Source: Macrostomum hystrix (Eukaryota > Animalia > Platyhelminthes). Taken from it: 64,000 nucleotides of DNA. Shown in pieces: positions 23,803-57,716 of this stretch. The stretch spans positions 3,844,001 to 3,908,000 of the forward strand of contig CATNEN010000033.1 in assembly GCA_950097015.1 (NCBI GenBank). The letters are read 5' to 3'. Position 1 is the first letter of the stretch. Each line of letters opens with the position of its first letter. Under the pieces are notes generated by a model. It saw only the letters and a program-made list of their open reading frames with translations, did not search any database and had not been told where the DNA came from. The translations under genes and the position numbers were made by a program.

Positions 23803-25725
23803 TTAGTCGACCTCCTCGACGGTTGGTCCCCCAGCGCGACCTGCTCGCTGCGGTCCGTGCTGCGGCGGCGGCTGCTGCTGCTGCTGCTGATGCAGCTTGG
23901 CCATGAGAGGTGAGCACAGGCTGCTCAGCTGGCGCTGCTGCTCGGCGATCTCGTCCTTGTCGGCGGTCTGGTTGTTCTCCAGCCAGGAGATTACGCGGTT
24001 GCACGCGGCGGTCACCTCGCCGGCCTCCTTCTCGCCCAGCCGATCCTTGCAGTCCTCGGCCGCCTGCTTGTACTGGAAGGCGAGCGACTCCAGCTGGTTG
24101 CGGGCTGTCAGACGCTCGCGGTGCCGCTCGTCCTCCGCGTGAAACTTCTCCGCGTCGCGCACCATGCGCTCGATCTCGTCCTTCGAGAGTCGGCCCTTGT
24201 CGTTCGTGATCGTGATCTTCTCCTCCCGGCTGGTGCTCTTGTCCTTCGCCGACACCACCAGGATTCCGTTGGCGTCGACGTCGAAGGTCACCTCGATCTG
24301 CGGCACTCCACGAGGCGCTGGCGGGATGCCGTCCAGGTTGAACTGGCCCAGCAGGTGGTTGTCCCTGGTGAGCGCCCGCTCGCCCTCAAACACCTGGATG
24401 GTGACGCCGCTCTGGTTGTCCGAGTACGTCGTGAACGTCTGTGTCGCCTTGGTCGGGATGCGGCTGTTCCTCTCCACGATCTTGGTCATCACGCCGCCGG
24501 CGGTCTCGATGCCCAGCGACAGCGGAGCCACGTCCAGCAGCAGCAGGTCCTCGATCTTCTCGTCCTTCACGCCGGTCAGCACGGCCGCCTGAACTGCCGC
24601 ACCGTAGGCGACCGCCTCGTCCGGGTTGATCGACTTGTTCAGCGACCGGCCGCCCATGAACTCCTGCAGCAGCTTCTGCACCTTCGGGATCCGCGTGGAT
24701 CCGCCCACCAGGACAATCTCGCTGATGCTGCTCTTGTCCATCTTGGCGTCCCTCAGCGCTCGCTCCACCGGCTCCATCGTCTGGCGGAAGAGGTCGACGC
24801 ACAGCTCCTCGAAGCGAGCCCTGGTCACGCTGGTGTAAAAGTCGACGCCCTCAAACAGCGAGTCAATCTCGATGCTCGCCTGCGCCGAGCTGCTCAGAGT
24901 TCGCTTCGCTCGCTCAGCCGCCGTGCGCAGCCGCCTCACTGCGCGAGCGTTGCCGCTCATGTCCTTGCGGTACTTGCGCTTGAACTCCTGCATCAGGTGC
25001 TCCACCAGCCGGTTGTCAAAGTCCTCGCCGCCCAGGTGAGTGTCGCCAGCCGTCGATCGCACCTCGAACATGCTGCCCTCCGACACCGTCAGGATGGACA
25101 CGTCGAACGTGCCGCCTCCCAGGTCGAAGATCAGAATGTTCTTCTCGCCCTCCAGGCTCTTGTCCAGCCCGTAGGCCAGAGCAGCTGCCGTCGGCTCGTT
25201 CACAATCCGCAGCACATTCAGCCCAGCGATCGCGCCCGCGTCCTTCGTCGCCTGCCGCTGGCTGTCGTTGAAGTAGGCCGGCACCGTGATCACAGCGTCC
25301 GTCACCTTCTCGCCAAGGTAGGCCTCCGCAGTCTCCTTCATCTTGGTCAGCACCATGGCCGAGATCTCCTCCGGGTAGAAGCTGCGCCTCTCGCCCATGT
25401 ACTGAACCTCAATCTTCGGCCGGCCTCCGTCACTCACCACCTTGAACGGCCACAGCTTCAGGTCCCGCTGCACCGTCTCGTCGCTGAACTTGCGACCAAT
25501 GAGCCGCTTGGCGTCAAACACCGTGTTCTCCGGGTTCATCGCCACCTGGTTCTTCGCCGCATCGCCCACCAGCCTCTCCGTGTCCGTGAAGGCCACGTAG
25601 CTCGGCGTGGTTCTGTTGCCCTGATCATTGGCGATGATCTCCACCTTGCCTGCCTGGAACACGCCCACGCATGAGTACGTGGTGCCCAGGTCGATGCCGA
25701 TTGCGGGTCCGTTCCTCTTGCCCAT
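23803..25725 (-). CDS. hsp70: Heat-inducible cytosolic Hsp70, 640 aa, intronless (copy 1)
   Basis: Signatures [36 protein letters not shown]; C-terminal GPTVEEVD; no introns; HSE promoter. Confidence 0.99.
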
Positions 25726-25892
25726 GTTGCTTGGAATTGCTTCTCAGAACTTGAGTCGCTTCTCTCTAGCTTCAATTGATAGCTTCGCAAAGCACTGACG
25801 CTTTGTGAGTCGCTTGTGAGATGCTTCTGGCTTTTGGTTTGCTTCGGTTGCGATCCGAATTCGCTGATGGAGGAGCCCGCAATATCGCCTTC

Positions 25893-26079
25893 TTTTATAG
25901 ACCGCAGCCCGTCTTCGCGAAACTTCCAGAACTCTCCACACAGCCCGTCACCCGCTTGCCCAAGTGTGCTATTTTTAGAACGTGGAAAGTTCTAGAAGAA
26001 ACGCAAACGAAATGTTTTCTCTTAGGCATCTTGATCGTCTACTTCAAGTAGAAATACAAACATTTTTCTAGAACTTTCT
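25893..26079 (-). promoter_or_regulatory. hsp70 copy 1 promoter: TATAAAA 25893-25899; HSEs at 25913-25932 (4 pentamers), 25984-25998 and 26065-26079 (3 each)
   Basis: Perfect alternating nGAAn/nTTCn pentamers, e.g. cTTCg cGAAa cTTCc aGAAc. Confidence 0.92.
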
Positions 26080-26264
26080 TTGCATATCTTGCAACGAACG
26101 TGAACAATTATCATTTTCGTTCAACGCAAAAATTTCACCATTTTTTCGAACTTTTTTAGGTTTTTTTAAATTTTGCATTCATAAATGACCACTATCTTAA
26201 TATATTAAGATATTAATATTAACTATCTACTAGTGGTCCTTGCTGCATAGCTTATTGATAAAGA

Positions 26265-26610
26265 TAGGAAGAATTGCCTCTCGCACTCGGCGGGTCCGCC
26301 CGCAACTATTGAATGGGGCGCCATGTAACAAACTAGCACAGCTTGTAAGCTGCAGATTCGAAGGAAAAACAAAAGACACCGACAATGCCTTGTGGAGGGG
26401 GTCGGTGGCAGAGCGATTATCGCGTCTGCCTCTCGCACCACGGTCCCTAAGTTCGATTCCACTGCGAGGCCACATTTATTTGGGGCGCAGCCGTGCAAAG
26501 AGGGCCTTGGGGGCTTGTCGTGCAATTTACGCCCTTGAGGGTCAATACCCAAGGCACAGTGAAATGTACACTGTCTGACGATGAGAAAGTCAGGGCAGAT
26601 GTACACACCT
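26265..26610 (+). mobile_element. tRNA-derived SINE, family 1 (partial), in the hsp70 spacer
   Basis: GGGTCGGTGGCAGAGCG (A box) ... GTTCGATTCC (B box); homologous to 46870-47458 (minus) and 63345-63605. Confidence 0.82.
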
Positions 26611-27073
26611 TAAATAAGAAATAAGTTATATAAGAATTAGCTGAGCTGGGGTAATTCAGAGTCGTTGTGCCGTCAACCGAAGTCCATGGACTGAAAAGCC
26701 GTACACAGCCTTCACATGCGCCGCGCAATAGCTGTGGCTGTGCTGTCGGCTGCCATCTGACCTATGCGGGAGGTGTGGTCATTTATTTTCAATTTTTATG
26801 CGCCTATGGATATAAATTTTCTCCCATGGAGTTTCATGTAGGCGAAAAACATACACTGCAAATTTACCAACGCTAAAAATAAAAATATATAAAATAAAAC
26901 AATTTCGATCACATTTCCGACGAAAAAAATTCGCGACTTGTCGGCTGTCAGTCTAAATGCTAATGTACGAGTCTTTTATGCCTTCCAATTCTTGTTTCCT
27001 CGAGCAAATCCATCATAAATTCCCCAATACTCCATGACGTGCTGTAAAAACCGAGAAAAAGCTTGAAATGCAA

Positions 27074-27260
27074 AGAAAGTTCTTGAAAAATGTTTGTATT
27101 TCTACTTGAAGTAGACGATCAAGATGCCTAAGAGAAAACATTTCGTTTGCGTTTCTTCTAGAACTTTCCACGTTCTAAAAATAGCACACTTGGGCAAGCG
27201 GGTGACGGGCTGTGTGGAGAGTTCTGGAAGTTTCGCGAAGACGGGCTGCGGTCTATAAAA
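27074..27260 (+). promoter_or_regulatory. hsp70 copy 2 promoter: HSEs at 27074-27088, 27155-27169 and 27221-27240; TATAAAA 27254-27260
   Basis: gTTCt gGAAg tTTCg cGAAg lies 13 nt upstream of the TATA box; mirror image of copy 1. Confidence 0.92.
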
Positions 27261-27427
27261 GAAGGCGATATTGCGGGCTCCTCCATCAGCGAATTCGGAT
27301 CGCAACCGAAGCAAACCAAAAGCCAGAAGCATCTCACAAGCGACTCACAAAGCGTCAGTGCTTTGCGAAGCTATCAATTGAAGCTAGAGAGAAGCGACTC
27401 AAGTTCTGAGAAGCAATTCCAAGCAAC

Positions 27428-29350
27428 ATGGGCAAGAGGAACGGACCCGCAATCGGCATCGACCTGGGCACCACGTACTCATGCGTGGGCGTGTTCCAGG
27501 CAGGCAAGGTGGAGATCATCGCCAATGATCAGGGCAACAGAACCACGCCGAGCTACGTGGCCTTCACGGACACGGAGAGGCTGGTGGGCGATGCGGCGAA
27601 GAACCAGGTGGCGATGAACCCGGAGAACACGGTGTTTGACGCCAAGCGGCTCATTGGTCGCAAGTTCAGCGACGAGACGGTGCAGCGGGACCTGAAGCTG
27701 TGGCCGTTCAAGGTGGTGAGTGACGGAGGCCGGCCGAAGATTGAGGTTCAGTACATGGGCGAGAGGCGCAGCTTCTACCCGGAGGAGATCTCGGCCATGG
27801 TGCTGACCAAGATGAAGGAGACTGCGGAGGCCTACCTTGGCGAGAAGGTGACGGACGCTGTGATCACGGTGCCGGCCTACTTCAACGACAGCCAGCGGCA
27901 GGCGACGAAGGACGCGGGCGCGATCGCTGGGCTGAATGTGCTGCGGATTGTGAACGAGCCGACGGCAGCTGCTCTGGCCTACGGGCTGGACAAGAGCCTG
28001 GAGGGCGAGAAGAACATTCTGATCTTCGACCTGGGAGGCGGCACGTTCGACGTGTCCATCCTGACGGTGTCGGAGGGCAGCATGTTCGAGGTGCGATCGA
28101 CGGCTGGCGACACTCACCTGGGCGGCGAGGACTTTGACAACCGGCTGGTGGAGCACCTGATGCAGGAGTTCAAGCGCAAGTACCGCAAGGACATGAGCGG
28201 CAACGCTCGCGCAGTGAGGCGGCTGCGCACGGCGGCTGAGCGAGCGAAGCGAACTCTGAGCAGCTCGGCGCAGGCGAGCATCGAGATTGACTCGCTGTTT
28301 GAGGGCGTCGACTTTTACACCAGCGTGACCAGGGCTCGCTTCGAGGAGCTGTGCGTCGACCTCTTCCGCCAGACGATGGAGCCGGTGGAGCGAGCGCTGA
28401 GGGACGCCAAGATGGACAAGAGCAGCATCAGCGAGATTGTCCTGGTGGGCGGATCCACGCGGATCCCGAAGGTGCAGAAGCTGCTGCAGGAGTTCATGGG
28501 CGGCCGGTCGCTGAACAAGTCGATCAACCCGGACGAGGCGGTCGCCTACGGTGCGGCAGTTCAGGCGGCCGTGCTGACCGGCGTGAAGGACGAGAAGATC
28601 GAGGACCTGCTGCTGCTGGACGTGGCTCCGCTGTCGCTGGGCATCGAGACCGCCGGCGGCGTGATGACCAAGATCGTGGAGAGGAACAGCCGCATCCCGA
28701 CCAAGGCGACACAGACGTTCACGACGTACTCGGACAACCAGAGCGGCGTCACCATCCAGGTGTTTGAGGGCGAGCGGGCGCTCACCAGGGACAACCACCT
28801 GCTGGGCCAGTTCAACCTGGACGGCATCCCGCCAGCGCCTCGTGGTGTGCCGCAGATCGAGGTGACCTTCGACGTCGACGCCAACGGAATCCTGGTGGTG
28901 TCGGCGAAGGACAAGAGCACCAGCCGGGAGGAGAAGATCACGATCACGAACGACAAGGGCCGACTCTCGAAGGACGAGATCGAGCGCATGGTGCGCGACG
29001 CGGAGAAGTTTCACGCGGAGGACGAGCGGCACCGCGAGCGTCTGACAGCCCGCAACCAGCTGGAGTCGCTCGCCTTCCAGTACAAGCAGGCGGCCGAGGA
29101 CTGCAAGGATCGGCTGGGCGAGAAGGAGGCCGGCGAGGTGACCGCCGCGTGCAACCGCGTAATCTCCTGGCTGGAGAACAACCAGACCGCCGACAAGGAC
29201 GAGATCGCCGAGCAGCAGCGCCAGCTGAGCAGCCTGTGCTCACCTCTCATGGCCAAGCTGCATCAGCAGCAGCAGCAGCAGCCGCCGCCGCAGCACGGAC
29301 CGCAGCGAGCAGGTCGCGCTGGGGGACCAACCGTCGAGGAGGTCGACTAA
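27428..29350 (+). CDS. hsp70: Heat-inducible cytosolic Hsp70, 640 aa, intronless (copy 2; protein identical to copy 1)
   Basis: Same signatures; identical translation in the ORF track. Confidence 0.99.
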
Positions 29351-52015: not shown

Positions 52016-52948
52016 TTAATAATCTTTTATCGCGACTTTCATGTCTTTTCTCTCGTTCCTCTGCACTCGCGATTCCTCATTGTCAGTTCTCACCTCGCTA
52101 GATAATTCAGTCAGATTCTCTACATCTACCTTCGATCTCTTCCGCCGCCTTCTGGTTGGTCCGCTTCTCATCCTCAAGCCTTCTCGTACCCCATGCGCGC
52201 ATCCTAACCCCTTATCGTGCGGGGGTTCTGTTTGAAGTTCTGTTTATTTCTTTTGAATTTCAAGTTTGCGCGTGCGCGTCACTTGGGGACAATTTTGGCC
52301 ATAGACAGTCTGAATTGAATTTCTTCTGTTTCAATAGAAAGCGACTTCGTTTGAACTGAATTTCCGCAAGCGCTGATATTTCTTAAAGTGTTTTGAATTG
52401 AAGTTCTGTTTGTTTCTTTTGAACAAGACTTTGTTCAAAATAGGAGGTAAGATGGTGTAATAAAAATAGGTTGTCAAGGCCACAGGGCACTTGAAGTAAG
52501 ATGTGCTCAATATCAATAGTTTAGGCAGCATTAAAATGTCCCAAAGTTGCTTGTAAAGTCTTTCAAAATTTTCTCCATGTTGTATTCTTGAAGTAACAAA
52601 TACAGAGATTCCAATTGTAGTGTCGGTAAATGTAAGTATAGCGCCGAAAGGAGCACTCGGCAGTCGACTGGATAAGCGTATATTTGTAACAGCAGTATTA
52701 TTAAATACTGGAAAGGTTCTTGAGTGTGTGCACCGCGCGGGGGTTTCTATTTATAGCCTGGGGAGCGAGTGGGAGAACTTTCTAGAAAGTTCTCATAGAT
52801 AGCCCGCGGGGGAGGCGCAGAGAAGATTCTGGAAACAACAGAGTGTTATAACAAGTGGTAGAAAGTTCTAGAAAACTATTTACGGAATTATCGTAACGAA
52901 ACCCACAACACCTCCCCACCAAAACTGTGAGTACAGCTGATAGAAAGT

Positions 52949-55900
52949 CTATAAGTCCATTTGTAGCCGTGGCTTTCGCTGCCTAGCCGACCGTCGTGGA
53001 TTATCTGGTCCGTAGGGCGGCGGGTGTTGGACTTGGTCCGGCGCTCGCCATCCTGGAGGCCTGGGTCGAGATCCTGGATGTGCCACCGCTGGTGTGGCCG
53101 GCAGCATCAGGTGGCCGGCCGTTTCGTTTTGTTGAGTCGGCAGTGATCCTGGCTCGCTGTCTTCCGCGGACACGTGTCGCGGTTGAAGCTGGTCGAAGTG
53201 CCGTCGCCACACCGGGCCGCTTGGGACAACCTTGACGTTGACGCTGCGGCTGCCGTGCCGCTTGGTGACCACTGCCGGAACCCAGCGGCCTTCCTTCTCG
53301 CGGCGTGGTCCGTAGTAGCGAGCGTAGACCGGATCTCCGACGTTGTAGCCTTCTCGGACGCGAGACACCTTTTTCCGAGCTCTGGACTCTTCGGCCTGCT
53401 TGACTTGGCGATCCTGGGCGAGATGGGCTGGAGATGGCAGCAGAGTATCAATCTGCGTCCTGATCTGCCGGCCATTTAGGAGTTCGCTCGGAGAGTAGCC
53501 GTTGACCGCAGGAGTCCGTCGGTACTGCATCAGGAACTGCTGTAGCGCCCTGGCAGGTGGCAGGCTGGATTTCTTCAGGGCCTTCTTGAAGGTCTGAACC
53601 AGTCGTTCGGCCGCTCCGTTTGTTGCAGGATGATACGGAGCTCCTGTGAGGTGCGCGATGCCGTGTTCGCGACACCAAGCTTGAAACTCCTCAGCCATGA
53701 ATGCCGCTGCATTGTCTGTGACGATGGCGTGAGGGTAGCCGAAGTGGGCGAAGTCTTCTTCCAGAAGCTCGATCGTTGCCCGCGTTGACATGGATTGCGT
53801 CGGGTGTATGCACGGGTACTTCGAGTAGGCGTCCGTGAGCACTAGCCAGTTGTTGCCGAGGAAGTTGACTGCGTGATCCAGATGTAGGCGACTCCAAGGC
53901 TTCTCAGGCATCATCCACGGATGGACGGCGGCCTTTGGCGGATGATTTTGGTGCTCAGCACAGCTGTGGCAGCCGTGGCACAGGTGCTCGACGTCGTCGT
54001 CGATGTTCGGCCAGTAGACTGCCGATCGAGCCAGCTGCTTCATCCTCTGTATTCCAAAGTGTCCGAGGTGGAGGATATTCAGCACCTCATTCCGGAGGTT
54101 CCGAGGAATCACAAGACGACAGCCATGCAGAAGACACCCGTTGCCGCAGGAGAGCGAATCTTTGACCTTCCGTAAGCGGGCCACCTCGGCGTCTTCGTCT
54201 CGCCTGTCTGGTGGCCATCCTTCTCGACAGTAGCGCATGACGGTGGAGATCACCGGGTCCCTCGATGATTCTTTGGCCACGGCTGAGGCGTCAGCCGGCT
54301 GGATTTGCAAGCTTAGGACCTTGATCGCGCAGACCGTGTCGAAGTCGGCTGCGCTCTCCTCCCCGTCGAAATCTGGGTCGTCTCCCATTGGCAGGCGACT
54401 CAGGGCATCCGCGTTTCCGTGACTCTTGGTCTGGCGGTACTCGACTTCGTAGGTGAAGTTGTGGAGCAGGTTAGCCCACCGTGCCAGCCGGTTTGCCGCC
54501 ATCACTGGTGTCTCCTTCTCGGGCCCGAATAGAGAAATCAACGGCTTATGGTCCGTGACCAGGATGAACTTGCGGTTGAACAAGTATTGGAAAAACTTCT
54601 TTAGGCCGAAGATGATTGAAAGGGCTTCCTTCTGAATCTGAGGATAGCGGCGCTGAGCATCCGTCAGAGACTTTGAAGCGTTGGCGATCGGCCGCTCGCT
54701 ACCATCCGGGTAGCGGTGGAACAGGACGGCGCCGATCCCGACGTTGGATGCGTCGCAGGAGAGCCCGAGAGGGAGGTCGGCATTGTAGTGGACCAGCACG
54801 TTGTCCGACGAGAGCTCCTCCTTGATCTGGTCGAAGGCCCGCTGCTCTGCGTCTTTCCAGGTCCACGGTGTGTCCCTCCTGGTGAGCCGGTACAGCGGCT
54901 CGGAGATCGTGGCCATGCTTGGCGGCAGAAACTTCGCGTAGAACTGGACCGAGCCGAGGAATGACCGGAGGCTGGACACGTCCTTTGGTGGAGGCATTTC
55001 GCGGACAGCGTCCACCTTGGTTCCCTTGGCGATGCCTTCTTTCGACAGTACATAGCCAAGGTACTCGATGCTGGGCATGGCGAATTTGCACTTCTCCCGT
55101 CGGCAGCGAAGTCCCTTGTCAGAAAGGCGTTGGAAAAGCCGGCGTAGGTTTGCGAGATGCTCATCAGCGGTCGCGCCGCCGACCAGGTAGTCGTCCAAGT
55201 AGAAAACGACTCCGGGCAGATCACCGGCTACCATTTCCATGATGAACTGGAACTCACCCACTGCAGACTTCGGGCCGAAAGCGAGCCGCTTCTGAAGAAG
55301 CACACCCCGGTGGGTGCTCAGTGCCAGGCGCCTCTGACTCATCGGTCCCAACTCGATCTGGTTGTAGGCGTCGGCCAGATCTACCTTTGAGAAGCAGTAG
55401 CTGCCTCCCAGCTTCTGTAGCAGTTCCTCTGGGAGGGGCAGCGGGTGACGGTTGTCTTCCAGCTGCGGGTTGATAGTGCACGAGTAGTCTCCGCAGACTC
55501 GCAGTTTCGGCTGCTCTGAGCCGGTCGAGGGCTTTCGCACGGGGACCACGGGCGTCCCGTAGTCATTGAAGTCAGTAGGCTCCCAGATGCCTCTCCTGAT
55601 GCCCTCGTCGTAGGCGCGCTCGAGCTCCTCGCGGATGGCGAAGGGGACAGGCCTAGCCTTCCGGAACACCGGCTTTGCATCCGGGTTAAACTGCAACTCG
55701 AGCTTGAAGTCCTTGAGGCAACCCAGCTCGTCCTTCCACAGGTCCGGGAATTCGTCGCAAAGATTTCGGCAGGCCTTTTGAAGAGCCTCGTCCGGCGGCA
55801 GGTGGTCAAACACTGCGTTGACTTCTTGAATGGCGCTGGCAGCGCCGAGCAGTTTGTCGACGGAGATTCCCAACAGCTTCGTGGCGGTCCGGCCGAGTAG

Positions 55901-57211
55901 ATTCAAGCCGGGCACCTGTGTGACGATGTACTGGATGTCGTGCTCAGGAGCTGAGCCAGGCAATGTCGTTTTCCCGACGAAGGTACCTAGTACAGGTAAG
56001 TCGTGTCGGCTGGCGGACTCGTAGCGTGACTTCGCTACTTCGAGCGGCGGCGTCCCCAGCTTCTTCCAGAATGACTCTGTGATGAAGTTGCCGTTTGTCG
56101 CAGTGTCGACCTCGATGGCGAGAGCCTTGCCTTGGATGTGGATCGACACTTCCAGCTTAGGCAGGTCGTCCTCGGTTTGGGCTACAGCACGTACAAGCAC
56201 ATGCTCCTCGACCTGTTTCACTGGCTTCTTGAAGTTCGCCGCAGGGGCAGATCCTTTGGCGTTGGAACGGCAGACAGGTTCTAGGTGACCCACCTTTTTG
56301 CAGTGCCGGCAGGTCGCGTCTTTGAATCGGCAATCGTTTGCCCGATGGTTCTTCGCTCCGCAGCGGTAGCACGAACCAGACGCAGAGTCAGTAGTAGACC
56401 TGGAAGCAGTAGAATCTGTCGTAAATTTCGCCGAAGTGGCTCCGGGTCGCCGAACCTTCTGCTTAACCTTGTTAACGGGGCTGGATTTGTCGCCGTAAAC
56501 CGTCTCCTTGGCGACTCGGGCGGCTTCCTCTGTCTCGATGGCGATCTCGACAGCCCGGGCGAACGTGAGCTCTTCCACCTTTAATTTGAACAAAGCTTTG
56601 AGTACTGCTTCGTTCCTCACTGAGCAGATGAAACGCGTGCGCAGCGCCTCGTCCAGTGGATCTTTGATGGAAGAGAAATCGCAGGTGGTTGCATCCTGGC
56701 GGATTCTCGCAGCCAGTTCCTGGATCGTCTCACCCGGTTTCCGCCGCATGTCGCTCCAGAACCGGAAACGCTCCCGCACGATGAAGCGCTTGGTGTCATA
56801 CTGTTCTTCCATGAACTTCTCAATCTCGTCCATAGTGAGCTTGTTGATCTCCTTCCGCGGCGTCTGCTGCGCTGCCCAGTTTGAGAGAAGCTTGTAGACA
56901 GACGGAGACTGGTTCGTCAGGAACACCTGAGCCTTCTTGTCGTCGGGTATGGAGTTCGCGCCCGTGAAGGTGCAGAATCTGGCCAAGTAGTCGGGCCAGA
57001 GCTCGGACGTGGCGTCGAATGGCGAGAAACTCGGAGTCGACGTCGTCACATGCGTCGGCAAAGCTGCAGCCTGGGACTGGTCCGCTGCAGGCTTTAGAGA
57101 CCGAATGAGGTCGAGCATCATCTGCCGGTCAGCGTTCCGCTGTTGGCGCTCTTCTTCCATCTGCTGCCGTAGGAGGCTGATTATATCCTCGTCTTGCATC
57201 GTTTCGGGCAT
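52949..57211 (-). CDS. Gag-Pol polyprotein, 1420 aa, single uninterrupted ORF
   Basis: Two CX2CX4HX4C knuckles; protease EVDTA; RT YLDD; RNase H CDAS...TDHKPL; integrase HLGH..CHSC, LHLDH..TDN..NGAAER. Domain order PR-RT-RH-IN is that of Gypsy. Confidence 0.98.
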   Translation of the reverse strand: MPETMQDEDIISLLRQQMEEERQQRNADRQMMLDLIRSLKPAADQSQAAALPTHVTTSTPSFSPFDATSELWPDYLARFCTFTGANSIPDDKKAQVFLTNQSPSVYKLLSNWAAQQTPRKEINKLTMDEIEKFMEEQYDTKRFIVRERFRFWSDMRRKPGETIQELAARIRQDATTCDFSSIKDPLDEALRTRFICSVRNEAVLKALFKLKVEELTFARAVEIAIETEEAARVAKETVYGDKSSPVNKVKQKVRRPGATSAKFTTDSTASRSTTDSASGSCYRCGAKNHRANDCRFKDATCRHCKKVGHLEPVCRSNAKGSAPAANFKKPVKQVEEHVLVRAVAQTEDDLPKLEVSIHIQGKALAIEVDTATNGNFITESFWKKLGTPPLEVAKSRYESASRHDLPVLGTFVGKTTLPGSAPEHDIQYIVTQVPGLNLLGRTATKLLGISVDKLLGAASAIQEVNAVFDHLPPDEALQKACRNLCDEFPDLWKDELGCLKDFKLELQFNPDAKPVFRKARPVPFAIREELERAYDEGIRRGIWEPTDFNDYGTPVVPVRKPSTGSEQPKLRVCGDYSCTINPQLEDNRHPLPLPEELLQKLGGSYCFSKVDLADAYNQIELGPMSQRRLALSTHRGVLLQKRLAFGPKSAVGEFQFIMEMVAGDLPGVVFYLDDYLVGGATADEHLANLRRLFQRLSDKGLRCRREKCKFAMPSIEYLGYVLSKEGIAKGTKVDAVREMPPPKDVSSLRSFLGSVQFYAKFLPPSMATISEPLYRLTRRDTPWTWKDAEQRAFDQIKEELSSDNVLVHYNADLPLGLSCDASNVGIGAVLFHRYPDGSERPIANASKSLTDAQRRYPQIQKEALSIIFGLKKFFQYLFNRKFILVTDHKPLISLFGPEKETPVMAANRLARWANLLHNFTYEVEYRQTKSHGNADALSRLPMGDDPDFDGEESAADFDTVCAIKVLSLQIQPADASAVAKESSRDPVISTVMRYCREGWPPDRRDEDAEVARLRKVKDSLSCGNGCLLHGCRLVIPRNLRNEVLNILHLGHFGIQRMKQLARSAVYWPNIDDDVEHLCHGCHSCAEHQNHPPKAAVHPWMMPEKPWSRLHLDHAVNFLGNNWLVLTDAYSKYPCIHPTQSMSTRATIELLEEDFAHFGYPHAIVTDNAAAFMAEEFQAWCREHGIAHLTGAPYHPATNGAAERLVQTFKKALKKSSLPPARALQQFLMQYRRTPAVNGYSPSELLNGRQIRTQIDTLLPSPAHLAQDRQVKQAEESRARKKVSRVREGYNVGDPVYARYYGPRREKEGRWVPAVVTKRHGSRSVNVKVVPSGPVWRRHFDQLQPRHVSAEDSEPGSLPTQQNETAGHLMLPATPAVAHPGSRPRPPGWRAPDQVQHPPPYGPDNPRRSARQRKPRLQMDL

Positions 57212-57480
57212 GATTGTAGTAGCTTGATCCTTCGGTCAATAGTGACAGTCGTTGTAGATTAGACGTCCTCGAAGTTGATCAAGATCCTGCTTGCGACGCC
57301 AGAAAATTCCTGTTGTATTCTTGAAGTAACAAATACAGAGATTCCAATTGTAGTGTCGGTAAATGTAAGTATAGCGCCGAAAGGAGCACTCGGCAGTCGA
57401 CTGGATAAGCGTATATTTGTAACAGCAGTATTATTAAATACTGGAAAGGTTCTTGAGTGTGTGCACCGCGCGGGGGTTTC

Positions 57481-57607
57481 TATTTATAGCCTGGGGAGCG
57501 AGTGGGAGAACTTTCTAGAAAGTTCTCATAGATAGCCCGCGGGGGAGGCGCAGAGAAGATTCTGGAAACAACAGAGTGTTATAACAAGTGGTAGAAAGTT
57601 CTAGAAA
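57481..57607 (-). promoter_or_regulatory. 5' LTR promoter: TATAAATA (57488-57481) with HSEs at 57507-57526, 57554-57568 and 57593-57607 (duplicated at 52748-52874 in the 3' LTR)
   Basis: aGAAc tTTCt aGAAa gTTCt; aGAAg aTTCt gGAAa; aGAAa gTTCt aGAAa - all perfect alternating pentamers. Confidence 0.88.
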
Positions 57608-57716
57608 ACTATTTACGGAATTATCGTAACGAAACCCACAACACTCCACAAATAAGCTTGGCGTGCCAATAATAAGCATAACTACCTTGATGTAAGAAAG
57701 CGTAGGTAAATTCTGT

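What the first reader, a model, noticed from the sequence alone, without database searches (positions are those of the whole stretch)
52578..57643. Intact, newly inserted Gypsy element whose LTR is built like an hsp70 heat-shock promoter
Seen: each LTR has TATAAATA and, upstream on the transcribed strand, three perfect HSEs: a 20-bp palindromic 4-pentamer site 18 nt from the TATA box plus two 3-pentamer sites. The hsp70 genes in this window have the same layout (4-pentamer site 13 nt from TATA plus two 3-pentamer sites). The 16-mer AGAAAGTTCTAGAAAA is identical between the LTR (52860-52875) and the hsp70 copy 1 distal HSE (reverse complement of 26064-26079). Identical LTRs, a clean TSD and an open 1420-aa ORF indicate a very recent, probably active element. 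Established: HSF binds three or more alternating nGAAn pentamers; heat-activated retrotransposons with LTR HSEs are known in plants (ONSEN, a Copia element). Inference: this is an HSF-driven, stress-mobilised animal Gypsy element; the shared 16-mer may be convergence on an optimal HSE rather than capture.
Basis: partly seen in the sequence, partly recalled or inferred. Interest (0 to 1): 0.85.

Follow-up and report, generated by a model that had tools for sequence, protein, structure and literature searches.

The report
Flatworm jumping gene with heat-shock promoter
This is a young, complete Gypsy-type jumping gene in the flatworm Macrostomum hystrix whose promoter carries three perfect heat-shock switches, a design already published and tested in the sister species M. 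lignano, so it is a new example rather than a new kind.

Summary
The stretch is a complete Ty3/Gypsy LTR retrotransposon on the minus strand. It has identical 333-bp LTRs, a 5-bp target duplication and one open 1420-aa gag-pol frame. Each LTR carries three perfect heat-shock elements (HSEs) upstream of TATAAATA. Every perfect HSE in the 64-kb window lies in an LTR or in the two hsp70 promoters.

The host is not an insect. The genome's size and contig count match the Macrostomum hystrix assembly exactly, and its hsp70 is 95% identical to that of M. lignano. In M. lignano, Gypsy families with canonical LTR HSEs are published, induced more than 250-fold by heat and dependent on their HSEs (PMC12801592). 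This is therefore a new member of a known kind.

New here:
- The family has about 49 LTRs, mostly in pairs that are identical or nearly so.
- A diverged sister family keeps all three HSEs and the TATA box.
- Two unrelated Gypsy families in the same genome have the same HSE-TATA layout.
- About a quarter of independent relatives from marine metagenomes carry LTR HSEs.

Similarity to the hsp70 promoter stops at the HSE cores, which points to convergence rather than capture. Heat induction could not be tested, because no heat-shock RNA data could be identified. Other first-stage notes of this scan flagged similar HSE promoters elsewhere in this genome.

The parts
52573..52577 (.). Target-site duplication CTCCA, left copy
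   Evidence: Same pentamer at 57644-57648. 5-bp TSDs also flank 10 other paired copies and at least 6 solo LTRs.
52578..52910 (-). 3' LTR, 333 bp, TG..CA
   Evidence: 100% identical to 57311-57643. Preceded on the transcribed strand by the polypurine tract.
52748..52755 (-). TATAAATA box of the 3' LTR (LTR positions 156-163)
   Evidence: Present in 30 of 30 LTR copies checked.
52775..52792 (-). HSE1 of the 3' LTR: four perfect pentamers (GAACTTTCTAGAAAGTTC) inside a 22-bp palindrome, 18 nt upstream of the TATA box
   Evidence: The 46-nt HSE1-TATA module is perfect in 49 LTRs genome-wide.
52822..52834 (-). HSE2 of the 3' LTR (TTCCAGAATCTTC on the transcribed strand)
   Evidence: Invariant in all copies and in the sister family A'.
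52861..52873 (-). HSE3 of the 3' LTR (TTCTAGAACTTTC on the transcribed strand); holds the 16-mer shared with hsp70 copy 1
   Evidence: The common variant among copies changes only an unconstrained 'n' position.
52911..52920 (-). Polypurine tract GGTGGGGAGG abutting the 3' LTR
   Evidence: The same tract abuts the LTR in other copies and in several distant relatives (L032, L035/L036, L053, L078).
52949..57211 (-). Single gag-pol ORF, 1420 aa: two CCHC knuckles, aspartic protease (weak match), RT, RNase H, integrase (H2C2 plus core)
   Evidence: There is no room for an env gene: 99 nt of 5' leader and 28 nt after the stop codon.
57283..57301 (-). Primer-binding-site-like 19-mer TGGCGTCGCAAGCAGGATC, 9 nt downstream of the 5' LTR
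   Evidence: Its complement plus CCA sits at the 3' end of a tRNA-like sequence elsewhere in the genome. The primer tRNA is not identified.
57311..57643 (-). 5' LTR, 333 bp. HSE1 at 57508-57525, HSE2 at 57555-57567, HSE3 at 57594-57606, TATAAATA at 57481-57488. This is the presumed working promoter.
57644..57648 (.). Target-site duplication CTCCA, right copy
25726..27427 (.). Comparison locus, not part of the element: the shared upstream region of the divergent hsp70 pair (genes at 23803-25725 minus and 27428-29350 plus). Each promoter has a four-pentamer HSE 13 nt from the TATA box plus two distal HSEs.

Best explanation
The stretch is one young copy of a recently amplified Ty3/Gypsy (Ty3/Mdg4) LTR retrotransposon family of the free-living flatworm Macrostomum hystrix. 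It has no env gene.

Shown: the U3 part of the LTR is a compact heat-shock promoter, with three canonical HSEs in the 120 nt upstream of TATAAATA.

Inferred: in unstressed cells the promoter is off. On heat or proteotoxic stress, trimeric HSF binds the HSEs of the 5' LTR and drives transcription from about 30 nt downstream of the TATA box. The resulting gag-pol genomic RNA is reverse-transcribed and integrated with a 5-bp duplication.

The HSE array is kept by selection acting on the element. It arose within the retrotransposon lineage by convergence on the optimal TTCTAGAA-type HSE, not by capture of the hsp70 promoter. The identical 3' LTR and the solo LTRs scatter the same heat-shock promoter around the genome.
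For: Anatomy: LTRs, TSD, PBS-like site, PPT and the PR-RT-RH-IN domain order are all present.

HSEs beyond chance: 16 perfect HSEs in the window against 0.86 expected, all in the LTRs or hsp70 promoters.

Family size and age:
- 49 LTRs genome-wide carry the perfect 46-nt HSE1-TATA module, against 0 for the control.
- 8 of 12 LTR pairs are identical; the others differ at 1-3 sites.
- 5-bp TSDs flank the paired copies and the solo LTRs.

Constraint on the HSEs:
- 30 of 30 LTRs keep all three HSEs and the TATA box.
- Variants shared by several copies lie in R/U5 or at an HSE 'n' position.
- The sister family A' is 86% identical in pol DNA but only about 68% in U3. It keeps HSEs at all three positions plus the TATA box, despite indels between them.
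- HSE core triplets are invariant at 26 of 30 positions, against 66 of 111 other U3 positions, p=0.005.

Same design evolved repeatedly:
- Two Gypsy families only 27-28% identical in pol also have two or three HSEs just upstream of TATAAATA.
- 6 of 26 independent relatives from metagenomes carry LTR HSEs. That is 14 sites, against 1 for the reversed-pattern control and 0.37 in shuffles.

Trans-factor: HSF DNA-binding-domain genes are present in the genome.

Precedent: the host is M. hystrix. In M. lignano, every LTR family with two or more canonical HSEs was induced more than 250-fold by heat, and mutating the HSEs abolished induction of an LTR reporter (PMC12801592).
Against: There is no direct expression evidence. 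More than 16 presumed RNA runs with the same species label hold essentially none of the element's words. Laid contigs give only 150-250-nt scraps at low depth. That fits a tightly shut promoter but equally fits permanent silencing.

No heat-shock data set could be identified. The transcription start, HSF binding and transposition after heat are all inferred.

In M. lignano, two single-HSE Copia families did not respond, so HSEs alone do not guarantee induction.

The nearest relative found (L031, 77-79% in pol) has no perfect HSE, so the array is not essential to the lineage.
Confidence: 0.7

Rival explanations
1. The HSEs are real motifs, but the family is held silent by small-RNA or chromatin defence and is not heat-inducible in vivo. 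The recent burst had another cause, such as germline or stem-cell expression or a lapse in silencing.
For: Presumed RNA runs of the species hold almost none of the element. In M. lignano the LTR reporter seemed unexpressed in gonads, and two HSE-bearing Copia families did not respond to heat.
Against: The HSE cores are conserved between families A and A' while the rest of U3 diverged. Unrelated families acquired the same design repeatedly. Both argue that the motifs are used. All M. lignano families with two or more HSEs responded strongly.
Confidence: 0.15
2. The HSEs recruit HSF mainly for developmental or germline and stem-cell expression, where HSF has non-stress roles. Heat responsiveness is a side effect, not the selected trait.
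For: HSF has developmental and oogenesis roles in Drosophila (cited in PMC10745035). The M. lignano LTR reporter can be activated in embryos. The genome has four to five HSF-domain loci, which would allow specialisation.
Against: In M. lignano, embryonic reporter activity was seen only after heat treatment. Unstressed RNA runs show no expression here.
Confidence: 0.1
3. The LTR promoter was captured from a host hsp70 promoter by recombination or template switching. This would explain the shared 16-mer and the matching layout.
For: The 16-mer AGAAAGTTCTAGAAAA is identical in the LTR and the hsp70 copy 1 distal HSE. Both have a four-pentamer proximal site plus two distal sites.
Against: - No alignment extends beyond the 13-16-nt HSE cores. 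The best local score is 27, against a shuffle maximum of 26.
- The 16-mer lies in the opposite orientation, and hsp70 copy 2 already differs by one base.
- The same TTCTAGAACTTTC core occurs in the unrelated families B and D.
- HSE spacings and the TATA context differ from those of hsp70.
- HSE presence is patchy among relatives.
Confidence: 0.03

Closest known systems
HSE-containing Ty3/Mdg4 families of Macrostomum lignano: Mlig-id115|Mag, Mlig-id36/55|CsRN1, Mlig-id38|Gmr1/Osvaldo (Ustyantsev et al. 2025, PMC12801592; first noted computationally by Biryukov et al. 2020)
   Same: Same host genus and same superfamily. Canonical nGAAnnTTCnnGAAn elements (one to four) lie in the LTR upstream of a TATA box and start site. 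Copy numbers are low, in the tens. Several unrelated families in one genome share the trait. Mlig-id115 also has three HSEs and about 19 copies.
   Different: A different species, M. hystrix, which that paper does not mention. Orthology to any Mlig family could not be tested, because the paper's supplementary files are not held. No M. lignano-named protein is among the top 120 hits for pol or gag. Heat induction is shown there and only inferred here.
ONSEN / ATCOPIA78 of Arabidopsis and Brassicaceae (PMC3907296, PMC5059998)
   Same: An LTR retrotransposon whose LTR carries HSEs bound by heat-shock factor. Brassicaceae Copia elements evolved heat responsiveness repeatedly.
   Different: Ty1/Copia, not Ty3/Gypsy. 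Plant host and plant HsfA2. The similarity is convergent, not homologous.
Helitron1_CE and other HSE-bearing Helitrons of Caenorhabditis (PMC6927752)
   Same: An animal transposon family that carries and disperses canonical HSEs and adds HSF-1-responsive sites near host genes.
   Different: A rolling-circle DNA transposon. Its HSEs are not an LTR promoter driving a retrotransposon RNA.
Mag-lineage single-ORF Gypsy elements of aquatic invertebrates (Steamer-like elements; proteins named 'K02A2.6-like')
   Same: A single gag-pol ORF of about 1400 aa, a 5-bp TSD and an element of about 5 kb. The closest proteins, 57-64% identical over the full length, come from a snail (Batillaria), sponges (Ephydatia, Corticium) and many 5-kb metagenome contigs.
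   Different: Clade placement against GyDB reference sequences was not done. The link to Steamer rests on my own knowledge, not on a test here. I know of no report of HSEs in Steamer-type LTRs.
Drosophila-type hsp70 promoter, and the M. hystrix hsp70 promoters in this window
   Same: A multi-HSE array with a four-pentamer proximal site 13-18 nt from a TATA box.
   Different: No sequence homology beyond the HSE cores. The LTR array is more compact, about 120 nt against about 180 nt.

Membership tests
Ty3/Gypsy (Ty3/Mdg4, Metaviridae-type) LTR retrotransposon | Direct LTRs ending TG..CA, flanked by a short target-site duplication | tested here: met
   333-bp identical LTRs and the 5-bp TSD CTCCA. 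5-bp TSDs at 10 other paired copies and at least 6 solo LTRs.
Ty3/Gypsy (Ty3/Mdg4, Metaviridae-type) LTR retrotransposon | Pol domain order protease - RT - RNase H - integrase (integrase after RT) | tested here: met
   Pfam matches: Asp_protease_2 (weak) at 355-448, RVT_1 at 596-721, RT_RNaseH at 785-919, Integrase_H2C2 at 1035-1089, rve at 1123-1195.
Ty3/Gypsy (Ty3/Mdg4, Metaviridae-type) LTR retrotransposon | Gag with CCHC zinc knuckle(s); a primer-binding site after the 5' LTR; a polypurine tract before the 3' LTR | tested here: met
   Two CX2CX4HX4C motifs at about aa 281-314. A TGG-initiated 19-mer lies 9 nt after the LTR, and GGTGGGGAGG abuts the 3' LTR. The primer tRNA is not identified.
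Errantivirus-like (env-bearing) Gypsy | A third ORF (env) between pol and the 3' LTR | tested here: not met
   Only 28 nt lie between the gag-pol stop and the PPT. There is no other sense ORF outside gag-pol.
Mag clade of Ty3/Gypsy | Phylogenetic placement of the RT with GyDB Mag references | not tested
The only support is the single gag-pol ORF and relatives named 'K02A2.6-like'.
HSE-driven heat-responsive LTR retrotransposons (ONSEN; Mlig-id115 type) | Canonical HSE(s) of at least three alternating perfect pentamers in U3, upstream of the TATA box and start site | tested here: met
   Three HSEs, one of them with four pentamers, within 120 nt upstream of TATAAATA.
HSE-driven heat-responsive LTR retrotransposons (ONSEN; Mlig-id115 type) | HSEs conserved across family copies and related families | tested here: met
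   30 of 30 LTRs keep all three HSEs and 49 modules are perfect. The sister family A' keeps all three sites. Core positions are invariant at 26 of 30, against 66 of 111 elsewhere in U3, p=0.005.
HSE-driven heat-responsive LTR retrotransposons (ONSEN; Mlig-id115 type) | Strong transcriptional induction by heat | tested here: inconclusive
   Only unlabelled public runs were available. Presumed RNA runs hold about none of the element, and no heat-shock run could be identified.
HSE-driven heat-responsive LTR retrotransposons (ONSEN; Mlig-id115 type) | Induction depends on the HSEs and on HSF binding | not testable with these tools
   Needs a reporter with mutated HSEs, HSF RNAi, or ChIP/EMSA. HSF genes are present.
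Host hsp70-promoter-derived (captured) LTR | Sequence homology to a host heat-shock promoter extending beyond the HSE cores | tested here: not met
   Only 13-16-nt matches at the HSE cores. Local alignment is no better than shuffles.

The most novel reading that the evidence does not exclude
HSE-TATA promoters may be a recurrent, lineage-wide adaptation of single-ORF (Mag-like) Gypsy elements in aquatic invertebrates, not a curiosity of M. lignano.

In M. hystrix, at least three unrelated Gypsy families, a sister family, solo LTRs and a 35-bp HSE satellite supply most of the genome's HSE-plus-TATA modules. They could therefore have rewired which host genes answer to heat.

About a quarter of independent relatives from marine metagenomes carry the same design.
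Probability: 0.4. Interest if true: 0.6.

Novelty: new member of a known kind. Interest (0 to 1): 0.4.

Why it matters
It extends a mechanism just validated in one flatworm to a second Macrostomum species, one with a far cleaner, near-haploid genome. There, new insertions after heat could be mapped unambiguously.

The sister-family comparison gives sequence-level evidence that the HSEs are under selection within the element lineage.

The survey of relatives suggests that heat-shock promoters arise again and again in this group of retrotransposons. If so, temperature stress, including warming and intertidal heat spikes, may be a general trigger of retrotransposition and of new heat-responsive host regulation in aquatic invertebrates.

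Tried and rejected
- Expression. The single run search and the single read-laying run gave only contig-level data from coded runs. There was no heat-shock condition and no start-site information. Presumed RNA runs hold about 0 of the element's words. This is not evidence of silence under heat.
- The contig in run X3 that joins 57449 to 52720. I first considered it a one-LTR circle or a transcript end. It breaks exactly at the indel hot-spot at LTR positions 192-195. It is equally explained by assembly collapse of a multi-copy element, so it says nothing either way.
- Exact look-up of the hsp70 and gag-pol proteins: not in the collection.
- Orthology to the published M. lignano families. The paper's supplementary files are not held, and no M. 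lignano-named relative is in the top 120 hits for pol or gag. Left untested.
- P0057, a relative on a 137-kb contig: no DNA was served.
I did not work around it. Intactness of other copies is therefore not assessed.
- Primer tRNA. The PBS complement ends a tRNA-like sequence that ARAGORN calls a 94-nt tRNA-Gln, but Rfam finds no tRNA there. Unresolved.
- An insect or mosquito host was my first guess. It is rejected.
- hsp70 promoter capture is rejected.
Full report
**Observation.** Window 52578-52910 and 57311-57643 are 333-bp direct repeats, 100% identical. They run TG..CA and are flanked by the 5-bp duplication CTCCA. Between them lies one open frame on the minus strand, 52949-57211, 1420 aa.

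In the transcribed orientation each LTR carries the following:
- HSE3, TTCTAGAACTTTC, at positions 38-50.
- HSE2, TTCCAGAATCTTC, at positions 77-89.
- HSE1, the four-pentamer site AGAACTTTCTAGAAAGTTCT, at positions 118-137, inside a 22-bp palindrome.
- An 18-nt gap, then TATAAATA at positions 156-163.

A perfect three-pentamer HSE occurs 16 times in the 64-kb window against 0.86 expected, and no shuffle out of 100 reaches that number. Every match lies in one of the two LTRs or in the two hsp70 promoters.

**Anatomy.** Pfam places the domains in the order zf-CCHC, aspartic protease (weak), RVT_1, RT_RNaseH, Integrase_H2C2 and rve. This is the Ty3/Gypsy order. A TGG-initiated 19-mer lies 9 nt after the 5' LTR, and the tract GGTGGGGAGG abuts the 3' LTR. 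Only 28 nt separate the stop codon from the polypurine tract, so there is no env gene. It is a plain retrotransposon, not an infectious Gypsy-type virus.

**Host.** I first took the host for an insect. That is wrong.
- The window's Hsp70 is 95% identical to Macrostomum lignano Hsp70. Every other hit is at most 84%.
- The genome, 220,453,370 bases in 42 contigs, matches Table 1 of the M. hystrix assembly paper to the base (PMC10468722).

The host is therefore the free-living flatworm M. hystrix.

**The family in this genome.**
- The 46-nt HSE1-to-TATA module occurs perfectly 49 times. The control pattern occurs 0 times.
- Most copies come in pairs about 4.73 kb apart, giving roughly 22 paired copies.
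- At least six LTRs are solo, with their own 5-bp TSDs.
- Two small contigs repeat the flanks of other copies and are probably leftover haplotigs.
- Of 12 LTR pairs, 8 are identical and 4 differ at 1-3 sites. Mean difference between any two LTRs is 4.9 of 333.

This is a recent burst, and the window copy is one of several with identical LTRs.

**Are the HSEs kept by selection?**
- All 30 LTRs first fetched keep three HSEs and the TATA box.
- Among 34 aligned LTRs, the variants shared by several copies lie in R/U5 or at position 41, an unconstrained 'n' of HSE3. Changes in core triplets are singletons.
- A sister family, A', gives a stronger test. Its pol DNA is 86% identical, but its U3 is only about 68% identical and has 8-9-nt indels between the sites.
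- Family A' still has an HSE at each of the three positions and the same TATAAATAGAAAC. Pentamer number has turned over: HSE1 has three pentamers in A' and four in A, while HSE3 has four in A' and three in A.
- HSE core triplets are invariant at 26 of 30 positions, against 66 of 111 other U3 positions (Fisher p=0.005).

**The design is not unique to this family.** A genome-wide scan for TTCnnGAAnnTTC followed within 5-30 nt by TATAAA gives 204 matches against 51 for the reversed control. At least 73 of the first 100 listed belong to repeated families. Two of these families are complete Gypsy elements only 27-28% identical to family A in pol:
- Family B (L116): 257-bp LTRs, 99.6% identical, with three HSE sites in 65 bp ahead of TATAAATA.
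- Family C (L117): 374-bp LTRs, 99.7% identical, with two HSE sites ahead of TATAAATA.

There is also a 35-bp satellite with a perfect HSE in its repeat unit. Other first-stage notes of this scan flagged 'orphan heat-shock promoters', and an hsp70-style promoter in front of a GTPase, in this genome. These fit solo LTRs of such families, but I did not check those loci.

**Relatives elsewhere.** The gag-pol protein is unusually conserved. It is 57-64% identical over its full length to proteins of a snail (Batillaria), of sponges (Ephydatia, Corticium) and of many 5-kb metagenome contigs. Even Gag is 45-60% identical.

In 80 related loci from metagenomes, perfect HSEs are about 15 times denser in the LTR-bearing flanks than in the coding sequence. 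In 30 kb of flanks there are 14 sites, against 1 for the reversed pattern and 0.37 in shuffles. Six of 26 independent flank groups are positive.

Several relatives repeat the full design. L053 has three HSEs, one of them with four pentamers, the last about 10 nt from TATATATA. L032, L035/36, L045 and L078 have an HSE within 45 nt of a TATA box.

On a tree of the integrase region the trait is patchy: at least 6 changes are needed, of which well-supported branches force 2. The nearest relative, L031, has no HSE. So gains, or gains and losses, recur within this lineage.

**Capture or convergence.** The LTR and the hsp70 promoters share nothing beyond the 13-16-nt HSE cores. The best local alignment is no better than shuffles. 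The 16-mer is in the opposite orientation and already differs in hsp70 copy 2. The same TTCTAGAACTTTC core turns up in unrelated TE families. This is convergence on a preferred HSE.

**Expression.** More than 16 presumed RNA runs with the same species label hold essentially none of the element. Laying four runs gave only short, low-depth scraps. This fits a promoter that is shut without stress. It is not a test of heat induction. HSF DNA-binding-domain genes are present at four to five loci.

**Comparison with what is known.** Ustyantsev et al. 2025 (PMC12801592) report that M. lignano Gypsy families of the Mag, CsRN1 and Gmr1/Osvaldo clades independently acquired canonical HSEs in their LTRs. 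Their main results:
- Four families rise more than 250-fold within minutes at 37 °C.
- Mutating the HSEs abolishes heat activation of the Mlig-id115 LTR reporter.
- All their families with two or more HSEs responded.

They do not mention M. hystrix. ONSEN in plants and HSE-bearing Helitrons in Caenorhabditis are the other validated cases. Drosophila LTRs have only weak HSE-like matches.

**Verdict.** The heat-shock-promoter reading is well supported by sequence, by conservation and by close precedent, but it is not shown by expression. My confidence is about 0.7 for HSF-driven heat induction, and lower for actual heat-triggered transposition.

It is a new member of a known kind. The added value lies in four things: the second species, the selection signal from the sister family, the several convergent families in one clean genome, and the hint that this promoter design recurs widely among related elements of aquatic invertebrates.

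Noticed in passing
L121:3443-5257 (G000:C1, about 21763442-21765256): A 35-bp satellite of 52 copies whose unit (ATCCTGAAGTGTGTCTGAAGTTTCTAGAATCCTAC) contains a perfect three-pentamer HSE. About 18 perfect HSEs fall within 1.4 kb. It recalls HSF1-bound satellite III of human cells.
   Followed up: partly
L116:1342-5351 (G000:C1:11588841-11592850) and L117:1223-6304 (G000:C2:3576722-3581803): Two further complete Gypsy elements of unrelated families, 27-28% identical to this one in pol, with near-identical LTRs. Each carries two or three perfect HSEs just upstream of TATAAATA.
   Followed up: partly
L118-L120 (G000:C1:14880000-14888000; C1:7449600-7459500; C7:3222700-3232600): Other repeated HSE-cluster-plus-TATA modules (families D, E, F). 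They have no long ORF nearby and sit next to long tandem arrays of roughly 30-60-bp register. Their element type is unknown.
   Followed up: no
window 23803-29350: A divergent pair of intronless hsp70 genes encoding identical 640-aa proteins with mirrored promoters, like the Drosophila 87A arrangement. The roughly 1-kb spacer holds a tRNA-like stretch (about 26390-26475) that ARAGORN does not call as a tRNA, so it may be a SINE.
   Followed up: no
gag-pol protein, window 52949-57211: Full-length identity of 57-64%, with Gag at 45-60%, to elements of a snail, sponges and many marine metagenome contigs. This is unusually high across phyla and suggests horizontal spread, as reported for Steamer-like elements.
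   Followed up: partly
run X3, contig laid at window 56661-57449 joined to 52720-53305: A contig reads internal 5' end, one LTR, internal 3' end. This could be a one-LTR circle, tandem copies, or assembly collapse of a multi-copy element. The break falls at the indel hot-spot at LTR positions 192-195.
   Followed up: partly
G000:C36:1-5557 against C35:1580484-1586253; C16:11709-17476 against C31:2883654-2889432: Element copies on two small contigs have the same flanking sequence as copies on larger contigs. They are probably residual haplotigs, so raw copy counts are slightly inflated.
   Followed up: no
G000:C24:1302878; C39:7463611; C38:14190380; C39:10698374; C39:10679952: Four to five loci encode an HSF DNA-binding domain, more than the single HSF typical of many invertebrates.
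   Followed up: no
L133 (G000:C1:10205250-10205380): A tRNA-like sequence with an encoded CCA end that exactly complements the element's primer-binding site. ARAGORN calls it a 94-nt tRNA-Gln, but Rfam finds no tRNA.
   Followed up: partly
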